64,000 nt of DNA, from NCBI GenBank assembly GCA_964252035.1, contig OZ176205.1. One strand, written 5' to 3'. A model generated the notes under the pieces. That model had not been told where the DNA came from. It did no database searches and was given only the letters and a program-made list of their open reading frames with translations. This stretch comes from Podarcis erhardii. Taxonomy: Eukaryota. The position numbers and the translations under genes were made by a program. Below are positions 7,773-61,900 of the stretch, one piece after another (the stretch's first letter is position 1; each line of letters opens with the position of its first letter).

Positions 7773-10300
7773 CTATGTGCTCCCAATGCAATTATACATA
7801 AAGGAGGCGCAATGAGTTGTGTATAAGGTGGGATATGCTCGCAGGTGGCTGACATGATCAGTGTCCACAAAGTCCACAGCCTTAACAAGGACCTGATGCT
7901 GCTTCCGAGCCTCTATCATATTCTCCACATCACTTGCTTGAATAACAGAATCCGCCTTGGAGTAGAGGTATAGCTCAGGCCATCTAGAGAGTTGCTTCAA
8001 CATGGCATCATAGTGGCTCTCATGTACAAAACGGGTCACAGGATACAGTACCATCCGCCATGTCACCACCAGAACTGCAAATGTCAGTAAAAGGGCATAC
8101 TTAACACATACATTGTATGACGATAGGACAACTGAGAGGGCACCAAGCGCACCCCGCAGATTCTTCCTGCCAGGAGCACTGTCAAACACAGTACCCACCA
8201 CCCTTAGATGCTGGAACTGCTGGTGAGTGTGAAGAAGCTCCACAATGTAGCGGTACAGCATGACACCTCCATTGCTGAAGACATGAAAGAGCAGGGGCTT
8301 CGTCTCTACTTTGTAGTCAAAGAGGAGCTCCAGCAGCTTCTTTGCCAAGTTCTGCAAGGAATTTATACCCAAGGATTCTGAAAAGAAAACCAATCTCCAA
8401 GGAGCCGTATAGCGGATCACTACACATCCCTGTGAGGAATACACAAGTTTTAGTGTGTGCCATACAGTAAAAAGAACAAGAATTGGACAAGGTGTGCCAA
8501 GAGAAATATTCATATACTGCATATTTGAGAATTGCTCTCAATTTTCACTTCAGGAAATGGAAACATCTTAAAAGCAATACTCCTATATAGACTAGCAATT
8601 AGGTACATGTTAGGTTATCGCAAAGGGTGAGTCCTGAGGAATGAGTAACAAACTAAATTACCTGCAGTGGACTACAGTGATGGGCAAATGAAGCTCTTTC
8701 ATTTCAAGTCAGTGACTCATCCAAAAAAACCTTAACTCCAGTCACAAATCCCATACTTGTCAGCTGACATGCTTATAGCGTGTTTTATACCAGTGTTTGA
8801 GCAAGAGAGTGGAAAGGAATCCATTATGGCCAAAATGGCTATAACAGCAGGGGGAGAGAGACAACTGCTCAGTCTCCCTGCCTTTAACATGGAAACCACA
8901 TTTCAGTCTAAAACATCTATTATCAGAAAGAAATAAAGTGAACATCAGACAGGACCTGTTAATTTTCAGAATCTTTGAAGAGCTAGGCAATAAATACAAA
9001 ATAGTAGGCTTTTGAATGTCCCCTAGAATACATTTTAAAGAGGATGCCAAGCAAACTTCTTAAGCTAAAGTTGCTACCAAAACCAAACACTTCAAATATT
9101 CCCAAGCTTTCTGTTAACATAAAAGAGTTGAAAAAGATTTCAATCAGGCCATATAGAAAATTCAACTTTGAAATCAGTCAAGCTACTCTCTGCGACTTAT
9201 TATGCATGTATGTAATTTGTATACCACCCTTCATCTGAAGATCGCAGGGCAGTTCACAACAGAAAAATACAAAATACACAATAAAACAACAACAACCCAA
9301 TAATCCCCCCTCCTATAACACACATTTTAAAAGCCATAGAATGTTAATCAGCCAAACGCCTGGTTGAAGAGAAACATTTTCACTTGGCACTAGAGTCTAC
9401 TCTATGCAAGTCCTGGGAATGATCAGGTCAGGAAATTCTCACCCTAGAATTTTCACTTTTTGAGTAATAATAATAATTAATAATAATAATAATTTATTAT
9501 TTGTACCCCGCCCATCTGGCTGGGTTTCCCCAGCCACTCTGGGCGGCTTCCATAAAGAGTAGTTCTTTTATACACAATGTTCAGGTGAGCCACATGCCAC
9601 CCAAAGTACAAACCATCCAAGTGTTCTTGATGTATCTCTGGATTGGCCACGAATTGTTCTTTCTCTGAAGAACACTGCAATAACTGCAGTCAAGTAAGTT
9701 CACTACTCACCTCCTGAAGGTAGATGGTGCTGTATTTCTGCAGGTACCTATCCTTGCAGCCAGCCCACCCAAGCAGTATCACCACGGGCAGATTGCCTTT
9801 ACTTCTCTTTGCAGCACCGGACTCTGAAAAAAAGAAAAGAAGATTCAATGTCTGTCTTAGTCTTAACGAAAGGACTACTGTGCCCCCAGACACGCAAACT
9901 TTTGGGAGCTGCAGCCGCCTCCGCAGAACATCCCTGCACTTGTCAGGAGATTCCTGGGTAAGATGTGCGCGTGCGCGCCGATTATTTGCGATTAATTCAT
10001 ACTTCCAAAGGCGAAGCACCTCGGCAATGGAAGCAGATTTCGCGGCCAAGCCAAAGGGAACGCTGCCTAAAATCAAACTCTTAAAAAAAACAAAAAAGAA
10101 CCCGACCCCACGAAGACAGCCCTCGCCTATTTCCAGTTTCCACCTTCAGCACGTCGGTCGGACCTTCCTTTCCCTCTCCAGCGGCCGCTCCGCGAGTGCC
10201 GCACCAGCGAAACCTCCCAAACCCTCGCACACTCACCAGCATTTCTCTCCCGCGGCGTCGGGGGCAGCTCCACTACGCACCCCAACTCCTTGGACCCCAT
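7773..10300 (-). CDS. TMEM53: Transmembrane protein 53 (DUF829 alpha/beta-hydrolase-like), 277 aa. Coding exons: 10300-10237, 9823-9711, 8429-7773
   Basis: Spliced frame [14 protein letters not shown]...[34 protein letters not shown]...FHVFSNGG...FDSAPG...LYLYSKAD...HVSHLR. GT-AG introns with consistent phases (64+113+657=834 nt); same length as human TMEM53. Confidence 0.96.
9465..9554 (-). mobile_element. L2 LINE 3' terminal fragment with (AAT)n tail
   Basis: The reverse complement is identical over about 63 nt to the 3' end of the L2 at 26440-27303. Confidence 0.85.
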
Positions 10301-10700
10301 CCCTACGGCGGCTACCTCAGAACTGCCGCTTCCGCCTCAGCTCACCGGAAATACCCGCCCTCTTCGAGTCGCCTGACGAATCAGGAGGAGCAGGCGAGAG
10401 CGCGCGCGGCCGCTCCGTGAACCCCCCACTTCGCCGGTAACCGGAATGCTGCTTAGCAACGCAGCGGCCTTAGCAACCGAGCGGCCACCCCTTTGCATAT
10501 ACAGTATAAACACACACACTGCCCGTTTTCGTCAAAAACAAAACAAAACCGAGCTGGGCTTCCTCGTTGACAGGTTTGCCAGAGGGTCCCCGCTGGAAGT
10601 TTTGAAGCAGCCCAGGAAAGAAGGAGCAGTGGAGGCTAGGGCAGTCTGTATATGGCAAGAGCAGAACGAGGGGTGTGTAGGGAATTGCGAAGGCTTCGAG
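9900..10700. promoter_or_regulatory. CpG island / bidirectional TMEM53-ARMH1 promoter
   Basis: High CpG density around TMEM53 exon 1; ETS-like ccggaa motifs; NRF1-like gtgcgcgtgcgcg near 9965; divergent gene orientation. TSSs not determined. Confidence 0.8.
10448..10477 (+). promoter_or_regulatory. Two tandem RFX X-box-like motifs
   Basis: gctgcttagcaac (10448-10460) and gcggccttagcaac (10464-10477); both have the strong TAGCAAC half-site and a degenerate left half. Confidence 0.55.
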
Positions 10701-13053
10701 ACTGAGAGGGTGGTGGGCAGAGAGCACGAACTGAGAAGCTAGAATTCAAGCCTGGGTCTCTGAACGAGGAGAGAAAGGCACTGGACACTTTGCTGCATTA
10801 TTCGTTTATTCTGCATCTCAAATTCCAAAGCTGAGCTCCAGCAGAAAATCAGGGTGGGAGAAAACAAGCCCCACCCCACTCCGCAAGAACATATTTCTGG
10901 GGATGCAAAGAAGTTTTGCATTTTGTTGTTTATGTTTGCCCTGGCAGAGTTATCATTTGTTTTGTTTTGTTTTCCTAGCAGGATTCCTGTGACTTTAACA
11001 ACTGCATGATGGAGTAGTTCAGACACTTGGTGAGTTGAACCTTAATGTCTTTCTGCAGGAAACTCATCACAAATCTGAACTACAATGGACAGCAATTTTT
11101 AGCTCACAGCTTATCTAAATTTTAGGTTCTAGAGCCTACAGTATATTGTTTTTGCCAAGCACATCACTATGAAGGATTCTAGGTTTGGTTGTTTTCATTA
11201 TGCCTATTTTTGAATGGGTTAAGATGATTCTAATACCAGGCAGAAAGGATCTCCTTTGGGGAGTACTGTAATATAATTAGTTCTTTCAGGGAAGAAGAGT
11301 TAGAACGCATTCCCAACCATTCCTACTTAAGAGTAAGTTCATTGAATCCAACAGAGCTTACTGCCAGGTAAGTGAAATTATGATTGCAGCCTTAGTTACT
11401 GGGAAAGATTTTAACATTGTGTGTACCCAATGTGAAAAAACAGAGAAATCAAAGGGATATCTTCTAAAATGATTTTAATTAGGTAACTAGGCCACTTGAT
11501 ATATGAAGAAGTTACTGTCCTTTGGCTAAAGTATGTGCTTTTTACTTTATGTCCTACAATTCATCAGGCATATTGATTGTACACTTCTGCTTCCATAGAG
11601 CGCTGGAGAAACTGAGATTGGACTCCACTACATGGTTGGATCACTCTGTCTATTGGATCTTTAGTTTATATAATAGATAGTTAGTGATTATGTGTATTTA
11701 TTAACACCTCCAGGATCTTTATAAACTTGACATCTCAAGAGAAATAGGAAAAACCCACAAATTTCAATAACTTTTTGAGACATGATATATATGACCAAGC
11801 CTATAAGAAATATTTTTAAGGTGGAGGAATTTTAAAAGCTTAAGTTGTCAGAAATTAACAAATTGCAAAAGATACTACTGGGACAGGCTCCATCACTCAA
11901 GATGGGACCCGGGTAACATAATCAATATTCTGAGTGTTTAGAAGTTTCTGTTTTCTGATACTAAAGAATATATAAAAGCTTAAAAAGGACTGGTAGTTTT
12001 CCATTAGAATTCTGTGAGCACTTCTCAGAAGAACTTGTACCACATTTAACTCCATTGTTTAACAATATACTGAGGTGCCCAAGGCTGAAACTCCTGATAT
12101 ATGTAGGGAGGTGATATTAGTAGTTATCCAAAAGCATTTTGCCCCTTGGAACAATCCTGTTCATATATTAGATGTGAAAATGTTTACTATATTTATCAAT
12201 GGAAGGATTGATTATACTCTTATACATTTTATACCACTTTAACAGCCATGGTTTCTCCCAAAGAATCATGGAAACTGGAGCTTACCCTTAAGTGAATACA
12301 GTTCCTAAGATTCTTTGCGAAAGCCTTATGCTTTAAATGAATCAAATGCTGTGATTATGACCCATAATCAGGTTGTGAATATCATTCAGTTTCATGAAAT
12401 GCCCAAAATCCTAATCATTTTTCTCTGGATATGGACAGTACATTGGATTGCTTGAAAAAGATTGCCTTAAAAGGCTTTCAAATAAAATGAATTTCAGGGA
12501 ACGTTTTGTATGGGCCTTTGGACTGAGAAGGAGCATTAAATCATGTTGCTTTTCTGTGAGGGGTCCGTAGCCATTGCTCTGAAAGAGATTAAACAGGTTT
12601 GCTCTTCCTGTGGACAATACTATGTTGTTTTTGAAGAACCTGCTGCAGTTCTTGCCTGCTCTGCTCAATAACCTAAGAATGTACAGTATTATTCAACCTT
12701 TAAATCACCTTAGACAAATCGGAACAGTGGAAGGAATTCAAAGTCATGCTAAAACAAAAGTTCCATCAGCACAAACATTTTTGCTTGCCTGATGGAAATA
12801 CCTCTCCTCTCCATGCTGTTCTGGGCGTTCTCCTGGCACCTCCCCAAGCTAATTTGTGGGGATGGGGGTGCACAGGGGAGGAGAGGAAGGAAAGTCCCAT
12901 TGCTTACTTAAATCCAGCCCTTTAATACCCAAGGTAAAAAAAGAAATAGTATTTTGCATTGAAAGAAAATGTGTGGGGTCAGTGGCAGTGTTTAAGGCTC
13001 CAGATTACAAATAAGCTTAAAGACCTGAAGAATGGAAGTTTTGCTTTTATACT

Positions 13054-13271
13054 CAAAACAAAACAAATTCCTTCCAGTAGCACCTTAAAGACCAACTAAG
13101 TCAGTTCTTGGTATGAGCTTTCGTGTGCATGCACACTTCTTCAGATACACGGAAGAAGTGTGCATGCACACGAAAGCTCATACCAAGAACTGACTTAGTT
13201 GGTCTTTAAGGTGCTACTGGAAGGAATTTGTTTTGTTTTGACTATGGCAGACCAACACGGCTACCTATCTG
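13054..13271 (+). mobile_element. Penelope-like retroelement pseudo-LTR fragment with a 5' inverted segment
   Basis: Perfect 89-bp inverted repeat (13054-13142 / 13152-13240, 9-nt spacer) followed by actatggcagaccaacacggctacctatctg; 13-bp TSD ttgcttttatact at 13041-13053 and 13272-13284; contains a hammerhead motif typical of PLE pLTRs. Confidence 0.8.
13111..13148 (-). ncRNA. Minimal type I hammerhead ribozyme motif
   Basis: Minus strand reads GUAU-CUGAAGA-A-GUGUGCAUGCACAC-GAAA-GC-UC-AUAC: stem I GUAU/AUAC, core CUGANGA, palindromic stem II, GAAA, palindromic mini stem III (AGCU), predicted cleavage after UC (between 13115 and 13114). Confidence 0.75.
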
Positions 13272-15320
13272 TTGCTTTTATACTGTTCAACATTAAGGAT
13301 GCTGTACATATTTTGAATGGCTGTTAAGGTCTCTCTTAAGGGATGTAGAGCAACACTAAAATGGCAGTGTTTCCTAAAGTGTTAGATCTGTTTCAGATTG
13401 TGCTTATGGTTCCATTAAAGTGGTTAACAGCTTGGCAAAAATATTATATGGCAAGGCAAGAAGCCAAGGATTGCTAGATTTACTATGCATTAGCCAATTA
13501 AGCATGGTGGGCTTCCTGTTCTGGATTTCACATTGGATTGCTATGCTGCTGAGTTTTGTGATTTCATTAGTTTGGTACAAGTGCCAGAAAACAAATATTG
13601 GAAGAAGATGGAAAACAAAGGGATACCCAATTACTCAGGTACTGTGGTAGGTTTTTCTTTCTAAATATAGACTTAAAACCTGGCAGCATTATATCCCTGA
13701 CTTCATATGGGAGAAATGGAAAGAAAGGTTACCTCAGATATCTCCGCTCTTACTTTTTAAAAATCCTCCATAGCAGCTGTGTTTGTAGCACTCAAATGTA
13801 TACCCAATTGGCATCTTGGATAAATAGGCAGTTTCTGTTTGTGGCTCAAGATATCCTTGTACACTAATTCAAATGTCTACAAATAAAAAGGCTGGTGAGA
13901 GAGAGCTCTTGAAAATACTTTCTACAGAATTATGTGCTTTCGTCATTTAACAATAAGTACACATGGCAGATTTCTCATGTTCTGAGTTCAGCACTTGAAC
14001 AGGTATGTTTTTACCTCACTGACATCCAGAACCTATCTGTGCAGATGGCAAACTTGTGCCAGTCTCAATCTTTTCCAACTCAATCCAGAAGGCAATTGTG
14101 GGCTGAAGTCCCTATGTGTCTGGATTGCAGAAGATAGATGTGGAACATATAATATCTTTTGAGAGTTTCTCTGTGGCTGTGCCTTTAAAAATGCATTTTC
14201 CTTTGTTGGAAGCCTGAATCTCTTTGTGTCAACTGTGAATAAAGGTAAACATATTCACAGTAGGTGGTGCCATTGAATCTTCAAATAAGAACATGATGTG
14301 GCCATGCAGCCTTCTCCCCTGTGACTGACTTCTGTGTATCAAGTGCTGCAGCCAAGTAGATGAAGATTTATCTTTAGCAGTCAAAGGACTCATTGCTTCC
14401 TAGAAAAAGGAGGGAATATATGCCCCCATAAAAATATGGAGATGTTAATTTAGAATCAAACTAGCAATTGTTTCAGTTGGAAAGTTCTTTTAACTAGATC
14501 AGTGTAGAGGACACAGGTGCACAATATGGAGCTATAATTTATAGTGAATGTCCCAAGATGAAAAACAACTTCTGCCAAAACGCAAATATCAGCTACAAGG
14601 CTCACAAGTAAGATTTCACAAATATTCTGTAAATCAAGTGAATGAGACTCATGTTTCACCTCTTCCTCTGAAAGGCTACTACAGCTGTTCCCTTGTCAGT
14701 GCTAACATTTGTTATGGCTAATAACACTTTCAATCACAACTGTTTGAGGAAAATTGATTTATTTAGAACCTTCTCTCCTGTGCTGAAAATACTCTGCCAA
14801 GGACAAAAGCTCCTGCAAACCACAGGTTGTTAATTCCCTGATGGATTCCTATGCATGTCTCAGCACTGCTTCTTTATACATTTTTGAAGGGGCTGTAAAG
14901 AAAAAAAATGAAATAGGTAAGCTCTTCTTTATATTTAATGTTGCCTTTATCATAGCAATTTTGTAGATGTTACCCCTCAAATTTTTGTATGTGAATCAAA
15001 TTTGATTTTGATGTGCTGTCTATAGGATAAATAAGATTAGTGGGGCAGTGCTGACATAACTTCCAAGATGTCTGTGTTGAGTTTTTGCCTTTCAGACCGA
15101 CCTACAGAATCCATTTTAATTAGCCACTTTACCAAATGCCAAAATTTGGTAACTACAGAATGACACTGCTTGTTAAGCCTACATTACTGAAATACTTGTT
15201 AGTACCTTGACAAAACAAACTAGGCTTTAATATGGTTCAAACTATGGTTTAAAACAAGCATGGTGACTTGCTTTAAATTACAATTTTAATGTGAGATGCA
15301 AGGTGTGCCAGTGTCAAAGT

Positions 15321-15485: not shown

Positions 15486-27974
<12,489 letters not shown>

Positions 27975-56764: not shown

Positions 56765-56881
56765 TAGCCCCACCGAAGCGGGGCCTCAAAAAATTAGTTG
56801 TAAACTCATAACTGTTCCTCTCCACGGAAATCTTTAGTAAAAGGCGAAAGATTTATACGATCTGAAGAGAAACCAGAGTAT
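56765..56881 (-). ncRNA. RNU5: U5 spliceosomal snRNA
   Basis: Reverse complement ATACTCTGGTTTCTCTTCAGATCGTATAAATCTTTCGCCTTTTACTAAAGATTTCCGTGGAGAGGAAC...AATTTTTTGAGGCCCCGCTTCGGTGGGGCTA; invariant loop 1 GCCTTTTAC, Sm site AATTTTTTG and 3' stem-loop are all intact. Confidence 0.97.
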
Positions 56882-58915: not shown

Positions 58916-61900
58916 ATGATGACGGATCTGGTGGCTTTCCACTGTGCCAACTGCGGGATGGGGTTCCGCTCCAGGCGGCTGCTAGAAAAGCACATGGAAA
59001 AATTCTGCATTGGAGAGGAGACTGCATCTGATGCCAGATACCGAAACAGGCAAGCCCTCCGTAAGGGGAAAGAACCTAAGAAAGCAGAGACTCCGGACAG
59101 CATGGTAAAGACCTGGCAATGTTTGTTAGACTTTCCCCCAATATTTTGGGACCTACTAGCTTGTGTGCTGGAGGGGGAAAGTTATGTGCTGCAATTTTGC
59201 TGACTGCATTGGCGTATAAGGCTTTTCCAGTCATACCAAAAAGCCATCAATATTTTAAACTTTTTCCTGTGTATGTACACATACAGCAGAAGGAGGAGGA
59301 AGGTATGCCTAGATTTTTCCCCCACCCCAGTTTCGAGGTGTTTCATGAACTGAGAGGGTTTTGAAGCCTTCTGTTTAGATATTTTAGCTTCCATGAATTT
59401 GCATTTGAGTAACAATATATTTTCCTGACACCCCCTTCCATTTATTGGCTTTCTTTTCTGGGTGGTGGTTTCTTCTATGGCACAGCATCATCAGCTACAA
59501 GCACCAAAAACAAAGAAGCATCACTTGGATGGGGAATATGAGGAACAAGCACACCACTCCAGAAGCTTTGATCATAAAGGAAGTGTTTCAGACAGCCAGG
59601 CCTTGAAGAAACTGACTGAAGAGGTACTGCAGAAAAGAAGAGAGGAGCGCAGATCTTTGCTCCATCATAGATTCTCTGTTTACAGTACTTCCATTCTAAA
59701 CTACTTTACTTAGTACTTAATTAATTCAAACACTTAGGTTATTTCCCCTCATCTCTGATGCCTTTTTATTTTTTGTCACCACAGATGAAAAATTGAGCTG
59801 ATGAAACAAAGGGCTCATCATCTGAGTACAGCACCACAAGTCTAGCTTTCATTTTTTTTTTATTTATGATATTTATTAAGGCTTTTTTTAATACAATACA
59901 TAAAAATAAAACAGTATAACATATATCTCAACATAGTTTCACCACTTCTTTGGACTTCCTCTCATCTCCCGCTCCTACCTTCATTCCAATAAAATTTTGC
60001 CAGCAATTTATCGTCCTAATTCCACTCTTATTATCTAACTTTCTAATCTCCAACACCCTATGACCAAATCTTAGTAGATTAAATATAATCTAATAATTGT
60101 TCAAAAAAAATTTTAAATTCTTAAGTAGCTTATCCTCATAACTCCATTCTAGTTTAGTGGTGCCAAGTTATTTATGATCCAGCATCCTTCTTAACATTCA
60201 ACCAAATTACAATGTTTTTGCAAATAAGTCTTAAATTTCTTCCAGTCTTCTTCCATCCTCTCCTCTCCCAGGTCTCGGATTCTGCCAGTCATCTCGGCTA
60301 GTTCCATCAGTTGCGTCTGCCATTCTTCCAGTGTGGGTAGATCTTGGGTTTTCCAATATTTAGTGATGAGTATCCTTGCTGCCGTTGTTGCATACAGAAA
60401 AAAAGTTCGGTCCTTCTTTGTCACCCTCTGACCGACAATGCCCAAAAGGAAGGCCTCTGGTTTCTTAAGGAAGGTATACTTAAATACCTTTTTCAGCTCA
60501 TTATATATCATTTCCCAAAAGGCCTTCACTTTAGGACAGGTCCACCAGAGGTGAAAGAATGTTCCTTCATTCTCTTTGCATTTCCAACATTTATTATCAG
60601 ACACATGGTATATTTTTGCAAGTTTGACTGGGGTCATGTACCATCTATACATCATTTTCATAACATTTTCTTTCAAAGCATTACATGCAGTGAAATTCAA
60701 CCCAGTGGTCCACAACCTTTCCCAGTCCTCGAACATAATATTATGCCCAATATCCTGTGCCCATTTTATCATAGCCGATTTGACCGTTTCATCTTGTGTG
60801 TTCCATTTTAACAGCAAGTTATACATTCTTGAGAGTACCTTAGTCCTAGGTTCTAACAGTTCTGTTTCCAACTTCGATTTCTCCACCTGGAACCCTAACT
60901 TTTTGTCATTTTTAAAAACTTCTTTAATCTGAGCGTAATGTAACCAGTCTCGAACTTTATCCTTCATTTTCTCCAAACTCTGCAATTTCCAATTGTCTCC
61001 ATCTTTTTCTAATATCTCCCAATATTTTGGCCATTTGGCCTCCATATTGAGTCTTTTTCGGGCCTTAGCTTCCAAAGGTGAGAGCCACCTTGGAGTTTTA
61101 TTTTCCAATAAGTCTTTATATTTTGTCCAGACATTAAACACTGCTTTTCTGACAATATGGTTCTTAAAGGCCTTATTGATCTTAACCTTGTCATACCATA
61201 AATATGCATGCCAACCAAAAGCATTGTTAAAACCTTCCAAATCCAATACGTCAGTGTCTTCGAGAAGTAGCCAGTCTTTTAGCCAGCAGAAAGCTGCTGA
61301 CTCATAATACAACCTTAAGTCTGGCAGGGCAAAGCCCCCTCTTTCTTTCGCATCAGTTAATATCTTAAACTTAATTCTGGGCTTTTTGCCCTGCCAGACA
61401 AACTTGGAAATGTCTCTCTGCCACTTCCGGAAGCACTCTGTTTTGTCCACAATCTGTAGTGTTTGAAACAAAAACAGCATTTTTGGCAATACATTCATCT
61501 TGATAGCAGCAATTCGGCCTAACAAAGAAAGTTTCAATTTTGTCCAGCTATCTAAGTCTTTCTTAATTTCTGACCAGCATTTTTCATAATTATCCTTAAA
61601 TAGACTCAGATTTTTTGCTGTTATGTTTACCCCTAGGTACTTTACTTTTTTAACCACATTTAGTTCTGTCTCTCTCTGAAACCGTTCTGACTCTGTATCT
61701 GTCAAATTTTTTTCCAATACCTTAGTTTTCTGTTTGTTTAATTTAAATCCCGCCACCCGACCAACACAAGTCTAGCTTTCAGCTTATGCACTTCTTACAA
61801 GCATTTCAGAAAGCTCCCTCACCCCAACATTTCAGTTGAGCTAAGGGGCAATAAGCTGCTGTCTCCTGCTAGACGTGTTTTTTGAGCATTTGACAAACTT

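What the first reader, a model, noticed from the sequence alone, without database searches (positions are those of the whole stretch)
13111..13148. Complete minimal hammerhead ribozyme in a Penelope-type insertion
Seen in the sequence: the minus strand reads GUAU CUGAAGA A GUGUGCAUGCACAC GAAA GC UC^AUAC. All catalytic core nucleotides are present with one extra A after A9, a 4-bp stem I, a self-complementary 14-nt stem II and a 1-bp stem III inside the palindrome AGCU. Established: Penelope-like elements carry minimal type I hammerheads in their pLTRs that are thought to cleave as dimers via the palindromic stem III. Inference: this is a potentially functional self-cleaving RNA antisense to the presumed ARMH1 intron 1. 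The plus-strand arm lacks the core CU (cgGAAGA), so the inversion junction falls inside the ribozyme.
Basis: partly seen in the sequence, partly recalled or inferred. Interest (0 to 1): 0.75.

Follow-up and report, generated by a model that had tools for sequence, protein, structure and literature searches.

The report
Palindromic Penelope fragment with hammerhead motif
A young 218-base mirror-image fragment of a lizard Penelope-like retrotransposon carries one complete copy of that family's usual minimal hammerhead ribozyme motif, but here it is an ordinary by-product of insertion and is very unlikely to cut RNA.

Summary
The motif is real. The minus strand at 13111-13148 reads GUAU-CUGAAGA-A-GUGUGCAUGCACAC-GAAA-GCUC^AUAC, with every hammerhead core base present. 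A descriptor scan finds it once in the window and never in 100 random 64-kb sequences.

It sits at the centre of a 218-bp insertion (13054-13271) flanked by a perfect 13-bp target-site duplication. The insertion is two head-to-head, 5'-truncated copies of one about 120-nt module, identical over 89 bp. One arm carries a 31-bp "tail". This is the published Penelope-like element (PLE) insertion signature, and the motif has all published features of metazoan PLE minimal hammerheads.

Function at this locus is not supported:
- Only one copy is complete; the plus-strand copy starts at G5.
- The two copies lie on opposite strands, so no dimer can form in cis.
- No element promoter is included.
- Any transcript folds into a 94-bp hairpin (-179 kcal/mol) in which the hammerhead stems have probability 0.
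- Rfam finds no hammerhead.

Both arms read through the cut site, so uncut RNA was copied.

The scan has already noted this family about 150 times in this genome, including several similar palindromes. Verdict: an ordinary member of a known kind.

The parts
13041..13053 (.). Left copy of the 13-bp target-site duplication TTGCTTTTATACT
   Evidence: Identical 13/13 to 13272-13284. Its last base, and 4 of its last 5 bases, also match the element at the start of the tail, so the boundary is ambiguous by 1 nt.
13054..13142 (-). Arm A: the part shared with arm B, from hammerhead G5 to ...GUUUUGUUUUG. It ends at the tail-less reverse-transcription start.
   Evidence: Inverted repeat of 94 nt at 99%. 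It is 100% identical to arm B over 89 nt.
13111..13148 (-). Complete minimal hammerhead motif. The predicted cut site is between 13115 and 13114.
   Evidence: Its features match the min-HHR definition in PMC4209133.
13143..13151 (-). Central 9-nt spacer CGUGUAUCU (minus-strand reading). It holds arm A's 5' extension with U4, C3 and the stem I 5' strand GUAU. The outer 0-3 nt may be untemplated filler.
   Evidence: By direct calculation, the chance that random filler would supply both CU and a 4-bp stem I is about 1/2048.
13152..13240 (+). Arm B: the part shared with arm A. It starts at hammerhead G5, so its hammerhead copy (13150-13183) lacks U4 and stem I.
13241..13271 (+). 31-nt 'tail' ACUAUGGCAGACCAACACGGCUACCUAUCUG, present only on arm B. 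It ends at the distal reverse-transcription start, 92 nt after the cut site.
   Evidence: PLE tails of 30-40 bp at one end are described in PMC8557442. They were mapped between two RT start sites in PMC11167929.
13272..13284 (.). Right copy of the 13-bp target-site duplication

Best explanation
This is a dead-on-arrival mini-insertion of a Penelope-like retrotransposon (PLE). It was most likely made when the element's reverse transcriptase/endonuclease cut both strands of an AT-rich target 13 bp apart and used both 3' ends as primers.

How the two arms arose (inferred):
- One cDNA started at the distal start site and gave arm B with the 31-nt tail.
- The other cDNA started at the proximal start site and gave arm A without the tail.
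- Both ran towards the 5' end of a short element RNA that began a few bases upstream of the hammerhead.
- The two were joined head to head. Arm A reached the RNA end, so its hammerhead is complete. Arm B contributes sequence only from G5 onward.

The hammerhead is simply the family's normal minimal ribozyme motif carried along. Both arms read through the cut site, so the RNA that was copied had not been cleaved there.

At this locus the motif is not expected to act:
- The class needs a second copy in the same RNA (a dimer) or the element's own protein.
- Here the partner copy is truncated and on the opposite strand.
- There is no element promoter.
- Transcripts fold into a 94-bp hairpin.

Shown here: the anatomy, the motif, the target-site duplication and the folding. 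Inferred: the priming scenario and the inactivity.
For: Motif and significance.

Anatomy:
- Arms of 94 nt at 99% with a 9-nt spacer.
- Arms identical over 89 nt, with arm B 31 nt longer at its outer end.
- 13/13 target-site duplication.

Literature:
[quoted passage not shown] They show no monomer activity and only weak dimer activity. Dual motifs on opposite strands 100-700 bp apart have been seen (PMC4209133).
- PLE insertions are highly 5'-truncated, often have an adjacent inverted 5'-truncated copy, and carry a 30-40 bp tail at one end only (PMC8557442).
- The anole Poseidon enzyme cleaves and extends both DNA strands. It starts reverse transcription at two internal sites separated by the tail, about 85-92 nt after the hammerhead cut site. 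Its hammerhead cleaves only with protein, cleavage is not needed for insertion, and no RNA-seq reads end at the cut site (PMC11167929).
- Here the cut site to the distal end is 92 nt and the tail is 31 nt.
- The Poseidon_Ac consensus shows the same motif architecture with a different sequence.

Folding:
- The whole insertion folds as a hairpin at -179.2 kcal/mol (z -26.7).
- Hammerhead stem pair probabilities in that context are 0.0.
- A15.1-U16.1 would close a 2-nt loop, which cannot form in cis (direct reading of the sequence).
Against: - No other copy of this family could be examined, so its consensus, the true 5' end of its RNA and its link to an RT/GIY-YIG ORF are untested here.
- No nucleotide similarity to the one PLE consensus I could read (Poseidon_Ac) beyond the motif layout (by eye).
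- Rfam gives no hammerhead hit.
Expression, cleavage, and presence or absence in relatives are therefore unknown.
- The joining step at the centre is inferred. A template jump or a snap-back would give similar products.
Confidence: 0.8

Rival explanations
1. The complete minus-strand hammerhead is a working self-cleaving RNA at this locus. It would cleave antisense transcripts at 13115/13114, either as an intermolecular dimer through the AGCU palindrome or with the help of PLE protein supplied by active copies.
For: All core nucleotides and family features are intact. The insertion is young, so the motif is undecayed. The anole PLE hammerhead does cleave when its protein is added.
Against: - There is a single complete copy, and the partner lies on the other strand and lacks U4 and stem I.
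- No pLTR promoter is included, and no transcript is known on the minus strand here.
- On a minus-strand transcript the complementary arm is made first, and the hairpin (-179 kcal/mol) leaves the hammerhead stems at probability 0.
- The minimum-energy homodimer pairs through the palindromic stem II, not through helix III.
- Monomers of this class are inactive and dimers only weakly active.
- No reads end at the cut site in the anole.
Confidence: 0.06
2. The origin is the same, but the palindrome was made differently. A single cDNA folded back on itself (snap-back self-priming), or the RT jumped templates, rather than both target strands priming independently.
For: Perfect arms with a short 9-nt centre look like a hairpin loop. 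An earlier scan note proposes self-priming for such palindromes in this genome (s1-259088, untested).
Against: - The arm with the complete 5' end (A) is the one without the tail, while arm B has 31 nt that arm A lacks. Neither arm can therefore be a plain fold-back copy of the other.
- Each outer end abuts a copy of the target-site duplication, as expected for two target-primed starts.
- The purified anole enzyme extends both strands and uses two start sites.
Confidence: 0.12
3. The palindrome is an assembly artefact (a false inverted duplication) and only one arm exists in the animal.
For: PLE tandem and inverted structures are known to trouble assemblies. I could not lay reads on it.
Against: The arms have different outer ends, a unique 9-nt centre and a perfect target-site duplication around the whole unit. 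That is a biological signature, not a collapse or fold-back error. Three contig sets of organism A hold 0.87-0.95 of the sampled words of 12300-14000, although these may include the source sample.
Confidence: 0.02
4. The hammerhead-like string is a chance match with no relation to ribozymes.
For: The hammerhead fold energy is no better than shuffled sequence. There is no Rfam hit.
Against: There were 0 hits in 100 random windows. The motif shows the four family-specific features that a bare core search does not require. It also lies in an insertion with PLE-type structure.
Confidence: 0.01

Closest known systems
Metazoan Penelope-like-element minimal hammerheads (min-HHR; Cervera & De la Pena 2014, PMC4209133)
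   Same: Type I topology. CUGANGA / GAAA / H17 boxes. An unpaired nucleotide between A9 and G10.1. A G10.1-C11.1 pair. Helix III reduced to A15.1-U16.1 around a 2-nt palindrome (AGCU). A short helix I (4 bp) and a long, stable helix II. Often found as solitary truncated copies or as pairs on opposite strands.
   Different: The helix II sequence is a perfect 14-nt palindrome, so it can form a 5-bp hairpin with a CAUG loop or a 14-bp intermolecular duplex. This copy is not inside a recognisable pLTR next to an ORF. It is only the last ~100-120 nt module of the element.
Poseidon_Ac (PAc) of Anolis carolinensis: hammerhead and insertion mechanism (Frangieh et al. 2024, PMC11167929)
   Same: Same motif architecture (bulge after A9, G10.1-C11.1, a 2-nt palindrome at 15.2/16.2, C17). 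Reverse transcription starts about 85-92 nt after the cut site, against 92 nt here. Two start sites are separated by a 30-40 nt tail, against 31 nt here. The start region is AC-rich (...GACCAACACGG... here). Both target strands are extended. The target is AT-rich. Uncleaved RNA serves as template.
   Different: By eye I saw no nucleotide similarity outside the core boxes. In PAc the ORF starts inside the hammerhead, whereas here all three frames close within about 60 nt of the motif. This is therefore another PLE family, or an untranslated or non-autonomous module.
Non-LTR retrozymes (Cervera & De la Pena 2020, PMC7229834; Li et al. 2026 preprint, 10.64898/2026.07.22.740005)
   Same: Small, non-coding, hammerhead-bearing sequences derived from PLE pLTRs.
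   Different: Retrozymes are head-to-tail tandem repeats with a hammerhead in each unit, which allows dimer cleavage and circular RNAs. Here the two units are head to head and there is no tandem array.
L1 twin priming (inversion with 5' truncation); from my own knowledge, not checked here
   Same: The second target strand also primes reverse transcription, which produces an inverted segment within one pair of target-site duplications.
   Different: In L1 the second primer anneals upstream on the same RNA, so the two segments are different parts of the element. Here both arms are the same 3' module starting at the element's own two start sites, which gives a true palindrome.

Membership tests
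Metazoan PLE minimal hammerhead (min-HHR) | Catalytic boxes C3-U4-G5-A6-N7-G8-A9, G12-A13-A14, the A15.1-U16.1 pair, and H17 (not G) | tested here: met
   13144-13138, 13122-13120, 13119/13116 and C at 13115 on the minus strand.
Metazoan PLE minimal hammerhead (min-HHR) | One unpaired nucleotide between A9 and 10.1 | tested here: met
   A at 13137. The feature is listed in PMC4209133.
Metazoan PLE minimal hammerhead (min-HHR) | G10.1-C11.1 closing pair of helix II, with a long helix II (6-8 bp in the paper) | tested here: met
   G13136-C13123. The stem II segment is a 14-nt palindrome. The predicted hairpin has 5 bp plus a CAUG loop. That is one pair short of the published 6-8 bp, so the length criterion is borderline.
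Metazoan PLE minimal hammerhead (min-HHR) | Palindromic 15.2-16.2 (helix III only possible between two copies) | tested here: met
   A-GC-U at 13119-13116. The 2-nt 'loop' cannot close in cis.
Metazoan PLE minimal hammerhead (min-HHR) | Helix I of 4-5 bp | tested here: met
   GUAU/AUAC, 4 bp.
Metazoan PLE minimal hammerhead (min-HHR) | Family-wide conservation with covariation in helices I and II | not testable with these tools
   There is only one locus in the window. Pattern scans of metagenome and viral collections found no copies. No animal genome collection is on hand.
Metazoan PLE minimal hammerhead (min-HHR) | Self-cleavage (as a dimer or with protein) | not testable with these tools
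   This needs in vitro transcription.
Penelope-like element insertion | 5'-truncated copy with an adjacent inverted 5'-truncated copy | tested here: met
   Head-to-head arms at 13054-13151 (-) and 13152-13271 (+). The feature is described in PMC8557442.
Penelope-like element insertion | 30-40 bp 'tail' extension at one end only | tested here: met
   31 nt at 13241-13271, on arm B only. Described.
Penelope-like element insertion | Target-site duplication at an AT-rich target | tested here: met
   TTGCTTTTATACT twice, 13/13 identical, 69% A+T.
Penelope-like element insertion | Sequence continuity with a pLTR and an RT/GIY-YIG ORF of the same family | not testable with these tools
   No further copy exists in the window and no repeat library is on hand. 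The only consensus I could read (Poseidon_Ac) belongs to a different family.
Rfam hammerhead families (types I, II, III, HH9, HH10) | Score at or above the family's gathering threshold | tested here: not met
   No hammerhead hit at the gathering threshold on the window, at E<=10 on 701 nt, or at E<=10 on the 53-nt motif alone. This is expected for a motif without helix III.
Non-LTR retrozyme | Head-to-tail tandem units, each with a type I hammerhead | tested here: not met
   No direct repeat of the unit and no tandem array at 10000-14600. The two units are inverted.

The most novel reading that the evidence does not exclude
The insertion may matter as a perfect 94-bp RNA hairpin rather than as a ribozyme. 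It appears to lie in ARMH1 intron 1, so it would be transcribed with the host gene. Such a hairpin could be processed into small RNAs, or edited. Those small RNAs would match the hammerhead-to-RT-start module that every active copy of this PLE family must carry, making the locus an accidental hairpin trap against the family. Nothing here tests this.
Probability: 0.04. Interest if true: 0.5.

Novelty: new member of a known kind. Interest (0 to 1): 0.12.

Why it matters
The finding matters little by itself. Minimal hammerheads in Penelope-like elements have been described since 2014, including in reptiles. The insertion architecture seen here (inverted truncated copy, one-sided tail) is textbook for the class.

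Its modest value is as a natural record that agrees with recent test-tube results for a lizard PLE:
- Both target strands primed.
- Both alternative reverse-transcription start sites were used in a single event.
- The RNA that was copied had not been cut by its own ribozyme.

A genome-wide census of such mini-palindromes could turn these anecdotes into a measurement of how PLEs start transcription and whether their hammerheads ever act in vivo.

Tried and rejected
1. Rfam. I ran the whole window at the gathering threshold, 701 nt at E<=10 and the 53-nt motif alone. No hammerhead was found. The only hits are sub-threshold microRNA-precursor models that merely recognise the long hairpin; I reject these as generic hairpin matches.

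2. Reads. The look-up of sequencing runs listed DNA contig sets of organism A (0.87-0.95 of the sampled words) and of organisms B-G (0.55-0.66), plus RNA raw-read runs of organism G.
   - As a result there is no evidence on expression, RNA ends, copy number, or presence or absence in relatives.
   - Two local scripts read the whole window file as the subject of a motif scan and a local BLAST.

3. Other copies. Window searches found only this locus. Exact-pattern scans of metagenome and viral contigs gave nothing, apart from three chance 19-mers in microbial contigs. The family consensus and its 5' end therefore remain untested.

4. Lunse et al. 2017 (dimer cleavage of PLE hammerheads) is not held in the library. 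I cite it only through the review PMC6765202.

5. AC-rich stem-loop at the distal start site. A weak local hairpin with a CAACA loop forms at -4.1 kcal/mol, no better than shuffles. This is inconclusive.

6. Thermodynamic support for a Forster-type double hammerhead. The modelled trans structure is -13.8 kcal/mol. The minimum-energy dimer is -32.6 kcal/mol and pairs through the stem II palindrome instead.

7. Earlier-findings look-ups by sequence and by several word sets were blank.

Full report
**Observation**

In hammerhead numbering, on the minus strand:
- C3-A9 is 13144-13138.
- The extra A is 13137.
- G10.1 is 13136 and C11.1 is 13123.
- G12-A14 is 13122-13120.
- A15.1, G15.2, C16.2 and U16.1 are 13119-13116.
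- C17 is 13115, and the predicted cut is between 13115 and 13114.

The isolated 48-nt RNA has the hammerhead secondary structure as its minimum-energy fold: helix I of 4 bp, and helix II of 5 bp with a CAUG loop. The energy is only -7.8 kcal/mol, no better than shuffled sequences (z -0.36).

I wrote a min-HHR descriptor in the spirit of the published one and scanned both strands. It finds this single site in the 64-kb window and none in 100 first-order Markov random windows. The motif is therefore real and is not a chance match.

**Anatomy of the surroundings**

The motif sits at the centre of an inverted repeat: arms 13049-13142 and 13152-13245, 94 nt, 99% complementary, 9 nt apart. Reading the sequence and aligning the two arms in their sense orientation shows four things.

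1. A perfect 13-bp direct repeat, TTGCTTTTATACT, lies at 13041-13053 and 13272-13284. It brackets a 218-bp insertion (13054-13271).
2. The two arms are identical over 89 nt, from hammerhead G5 to ...GUUUUGUUUUG.
3. The plus-sense arm B continues 31 nt further at its outer end (ACUAUGGCAGACCAACACGGCUACCUAUCUG, 13241-13271). The minus-sense arm A stops and abuts the target-site duplication. Four of the next five bases agree with the target (AGUAU against ACUAU).
4. The 9-nt centre (minus strand CGUGUAUCU) supplies U4, C3 and the helix I strand GUAU to arm A only.

By direct calculation, the chance that unrelated filler would supply both CU and a strand pairing with AUAC is about 1 in 2048. I therefore take the centre to be genuine element sequence belonging to arm A.

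All three reading frames of the module close within about 60 nt. No other copy or fragment of the family is present in the window.

**What it is**

Three papers define the comparison.

*Cervera & De la Pena 2014 (PMC4209133).* They describe minimal hammerheads in the pseudo-LTRs of Penelope-like elements (PLEs) of metazoans, reptiles included.
[quoted passage not shown] In addition, helix I is short (4-5 bp) and helix II is long.
- The present motif has the first three features and the helix I length.
- Its helix II is a 14-nt palindrome, predicted to form a 5-bp hairpin.
- The 'extra A' is thus a family trait, not a flaw.
- They also report that most motifs are solitary remnants of truncated PLEs, that pairs occur on opposite strands, that monomers show no cleavage, and that dimers cleave only weakly.

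*Craig et al. 2021 (PMC8557442).* They list the structural hallmarks of PLE insertions: strong 5' truncation, often an inverted 5'-truncated copy adjacent to the 5' end, and a 30-40 bp 'tail' present at one end only. All three are seen here.

*Frangieh et al. 2024 (PMC11167929).* They purified the Poseidon enzyme of the green anole and found the following.
- It cuts and extends both strands of AT-rich targets.
- It initiates reverse transcription at two internal RNA sites separated by the tail, 111-118 nt into an ORF whose start lies 26 nt before the hammerhead cut site. That places the start about 85-92 nt after the cut.
- Its hammerhead cleaves only when the protein is present.
- Cleavage is not needed for insertion.
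- No RNA-seq reads end at the cut site.

In the present insertion the distal outer end lies 92 nt after the cut site (13180-13271), the tail is 31 nt, and the start region is AC-rich (GACCAACACGG).

The Poseidon_Ac consensus in that paper's supplement has the same motif architecture: CUGAGGA-U-G...C-GAAA-CG-UC. By eye I saw no other sequence similarity, and its ORF begins inside the motif. The element here is therefore a different PLE family, or a non-coding module of one.

**How it most likely arose (inference)**

- A staggered cut 13 bp apart left two 3' ends.
- The plus-strand end (...TTGCTTTTATACT-3') primed a cDNA from the proximal start site. This is arm A, possibly helped by the 4-of-5-base match.
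- The minus-strand end primed a cDNA from the distal start site. This is arm B, with the tail.
- Both ran towards the 5' end of a short RNA that began 4-7 nt before C3. They were then joined, with arm A complete and arm B contributing only from G5.
- A plain fold-back of one cDNA does not fit. The arm with the complete 5' end lacks the tail and the other arm has it, so neither can be a copy of the other.
- Both arms read through C17^A1.1. The copied RNA had therefore not been cleaved at this hammerhead, which matches the in vitro result that unprocessed RNA is the substrate.
- There are zero differences in the 89 paired arm positions and in the 13-bp duplication, so the insertion is young. By my own rough estimate from typical squamate substitution rates it is under about 10-15 million years old. 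Palindrome arms could also be homogenised by conversion.

**Does it work here?**

Probably not.
1. A15.1-U16.1 would close a 2-nt loop, so helix III cannot form within one copy. The class depends on a second copy in the same RNA or on its protein.
2. The only nearby copy is on the opposite strand and is incomplete.
3. Both arms begin at or just before the motif, so no pLTR promoter came along.
4. The 244-nt transcript of the insertion folds into a near-perfect hairpin at -179.2 kcal/mol (z -26.7). In that ensemble every helix I and helix II pair of the hammerhead has probability 0.0. On a minus-strand transcript the complementary arm is made first.
5. Even two free 48-nt copies prefer to pair through the palindromic helix II (-32.6 kcal/mol). 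A modelled trans hammerhead arrangement scores only -13.8 kcal/mol.
6. Rfam finds no hammerhead at any threshold. This is weak evidence, because motifs without helix III were discovered with descriptors, not with covariance models. The sub-threshold microRNA hits only reflect the hairpin.

**Genomic context**

- A TMEM53-like gene (Pfam DUF829, E 9e-49) lies on the minus strand. Its last exon is at 7773-8522 and an upstream exon lies within 9690-10076.
- A GC-rich block at 10200-10600, with a change of GC-skew sign, looks like a bidirectional promoter.
- The ARMH1-like first coding exon (MTSIKEQ..., ATG at 15543) is on the plus strand. It is preceded by a good acceptor (ctcaacag|G at 15529/15530) and followed by a GTATCCTC donor at 15749.
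- A strong candidate donor lies at 11029/11030.
Without RNA data this rests on splice-site sequence only.

**Limits**

I have no data on expression, RNA ends, copy number, or the state of the site in the related organisms listed.
Pattern scans of metagenome and viral contigs found only chance matches.
The PLE assignment rests on motif type and insertion architecture.

**Earlier scan notes (untested leads)**

A word search of this scan's earlier notes returned 153 that mention hammerhead and Penelope. Those shown were all from this lizard genome. They include several head-to-head palindromic mini-inserts. One follow-up states that most copies begin at one fixed base just before the ribozyme. 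This agrees with my reading that the RNA 5' end lay just upstream of helix I, but I did not test it.

**Verdict**

A function at this locus is not supported. This is an ordinary, recently inserted member of a known kind.

Noticed in passing
window 56766-56881 (-): A full-length U5 spliceosomal snRNA gene (Rfam RF00020, 110 bits, E 6e-19). It is the only Rfam hit at the gathering threshold in the window.
   Followed up: no
window 7773-8522 (-), 9690-10076 (-), 10200-10600: A TMEM53-like gene (Pfam DUF829, E 9e-49) lies on the minus strand with an upstream exon ([12 protein letters not shown]...). A GC-rich block with a GC-skew sign change looks like a bidirectional promoter shared with ARMH1.
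   Followed up: partly
window 15530-15748 (+), 11029/11030: The ARMH1-like first coding exon has ATG at 15543, acceptor ctcaacag|G and a U12-like donor |GTATCCTC at 15749. A candidate non-coding exon-1 donor CTTG|GTGAGT lies at 11029/11030. These would place the insertion in intron 1.
   Followed up: partly
window 60191-61756 (-): A 521-aa open frame whose end carries a CWKC...H...C cysteine motif typical of LINE-1 ORF2 C-termini (my own knowledge). It has no Pfam hit at E<=0.01.
   Followed up: no
window 13123-13136: Hammerhead helix II is a perfect 14-nt palindrome (GUGUGCAUGCACAC). Two RNA copies are predicted to pair through it (14 bp, total -32.6 kcal/mol) rather than through the AGCU helix III. 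This could favour a stem-II-swapped dimer in this PLE family.
   Followed up: partly
window 13049-13053 vs 13241-13245: The target end next to the tail-less arm matches the element's sequence at the start of the tail in 4 of 5 bases (AGUAU against ACUAU). This may be a microhomology at the proximal reverse-transcription start. The anole enzyme was reported to start without homology.
   Followed up: no
The tool's message says the filter also trips by chance. I did not inspect them.
   Followed up: no
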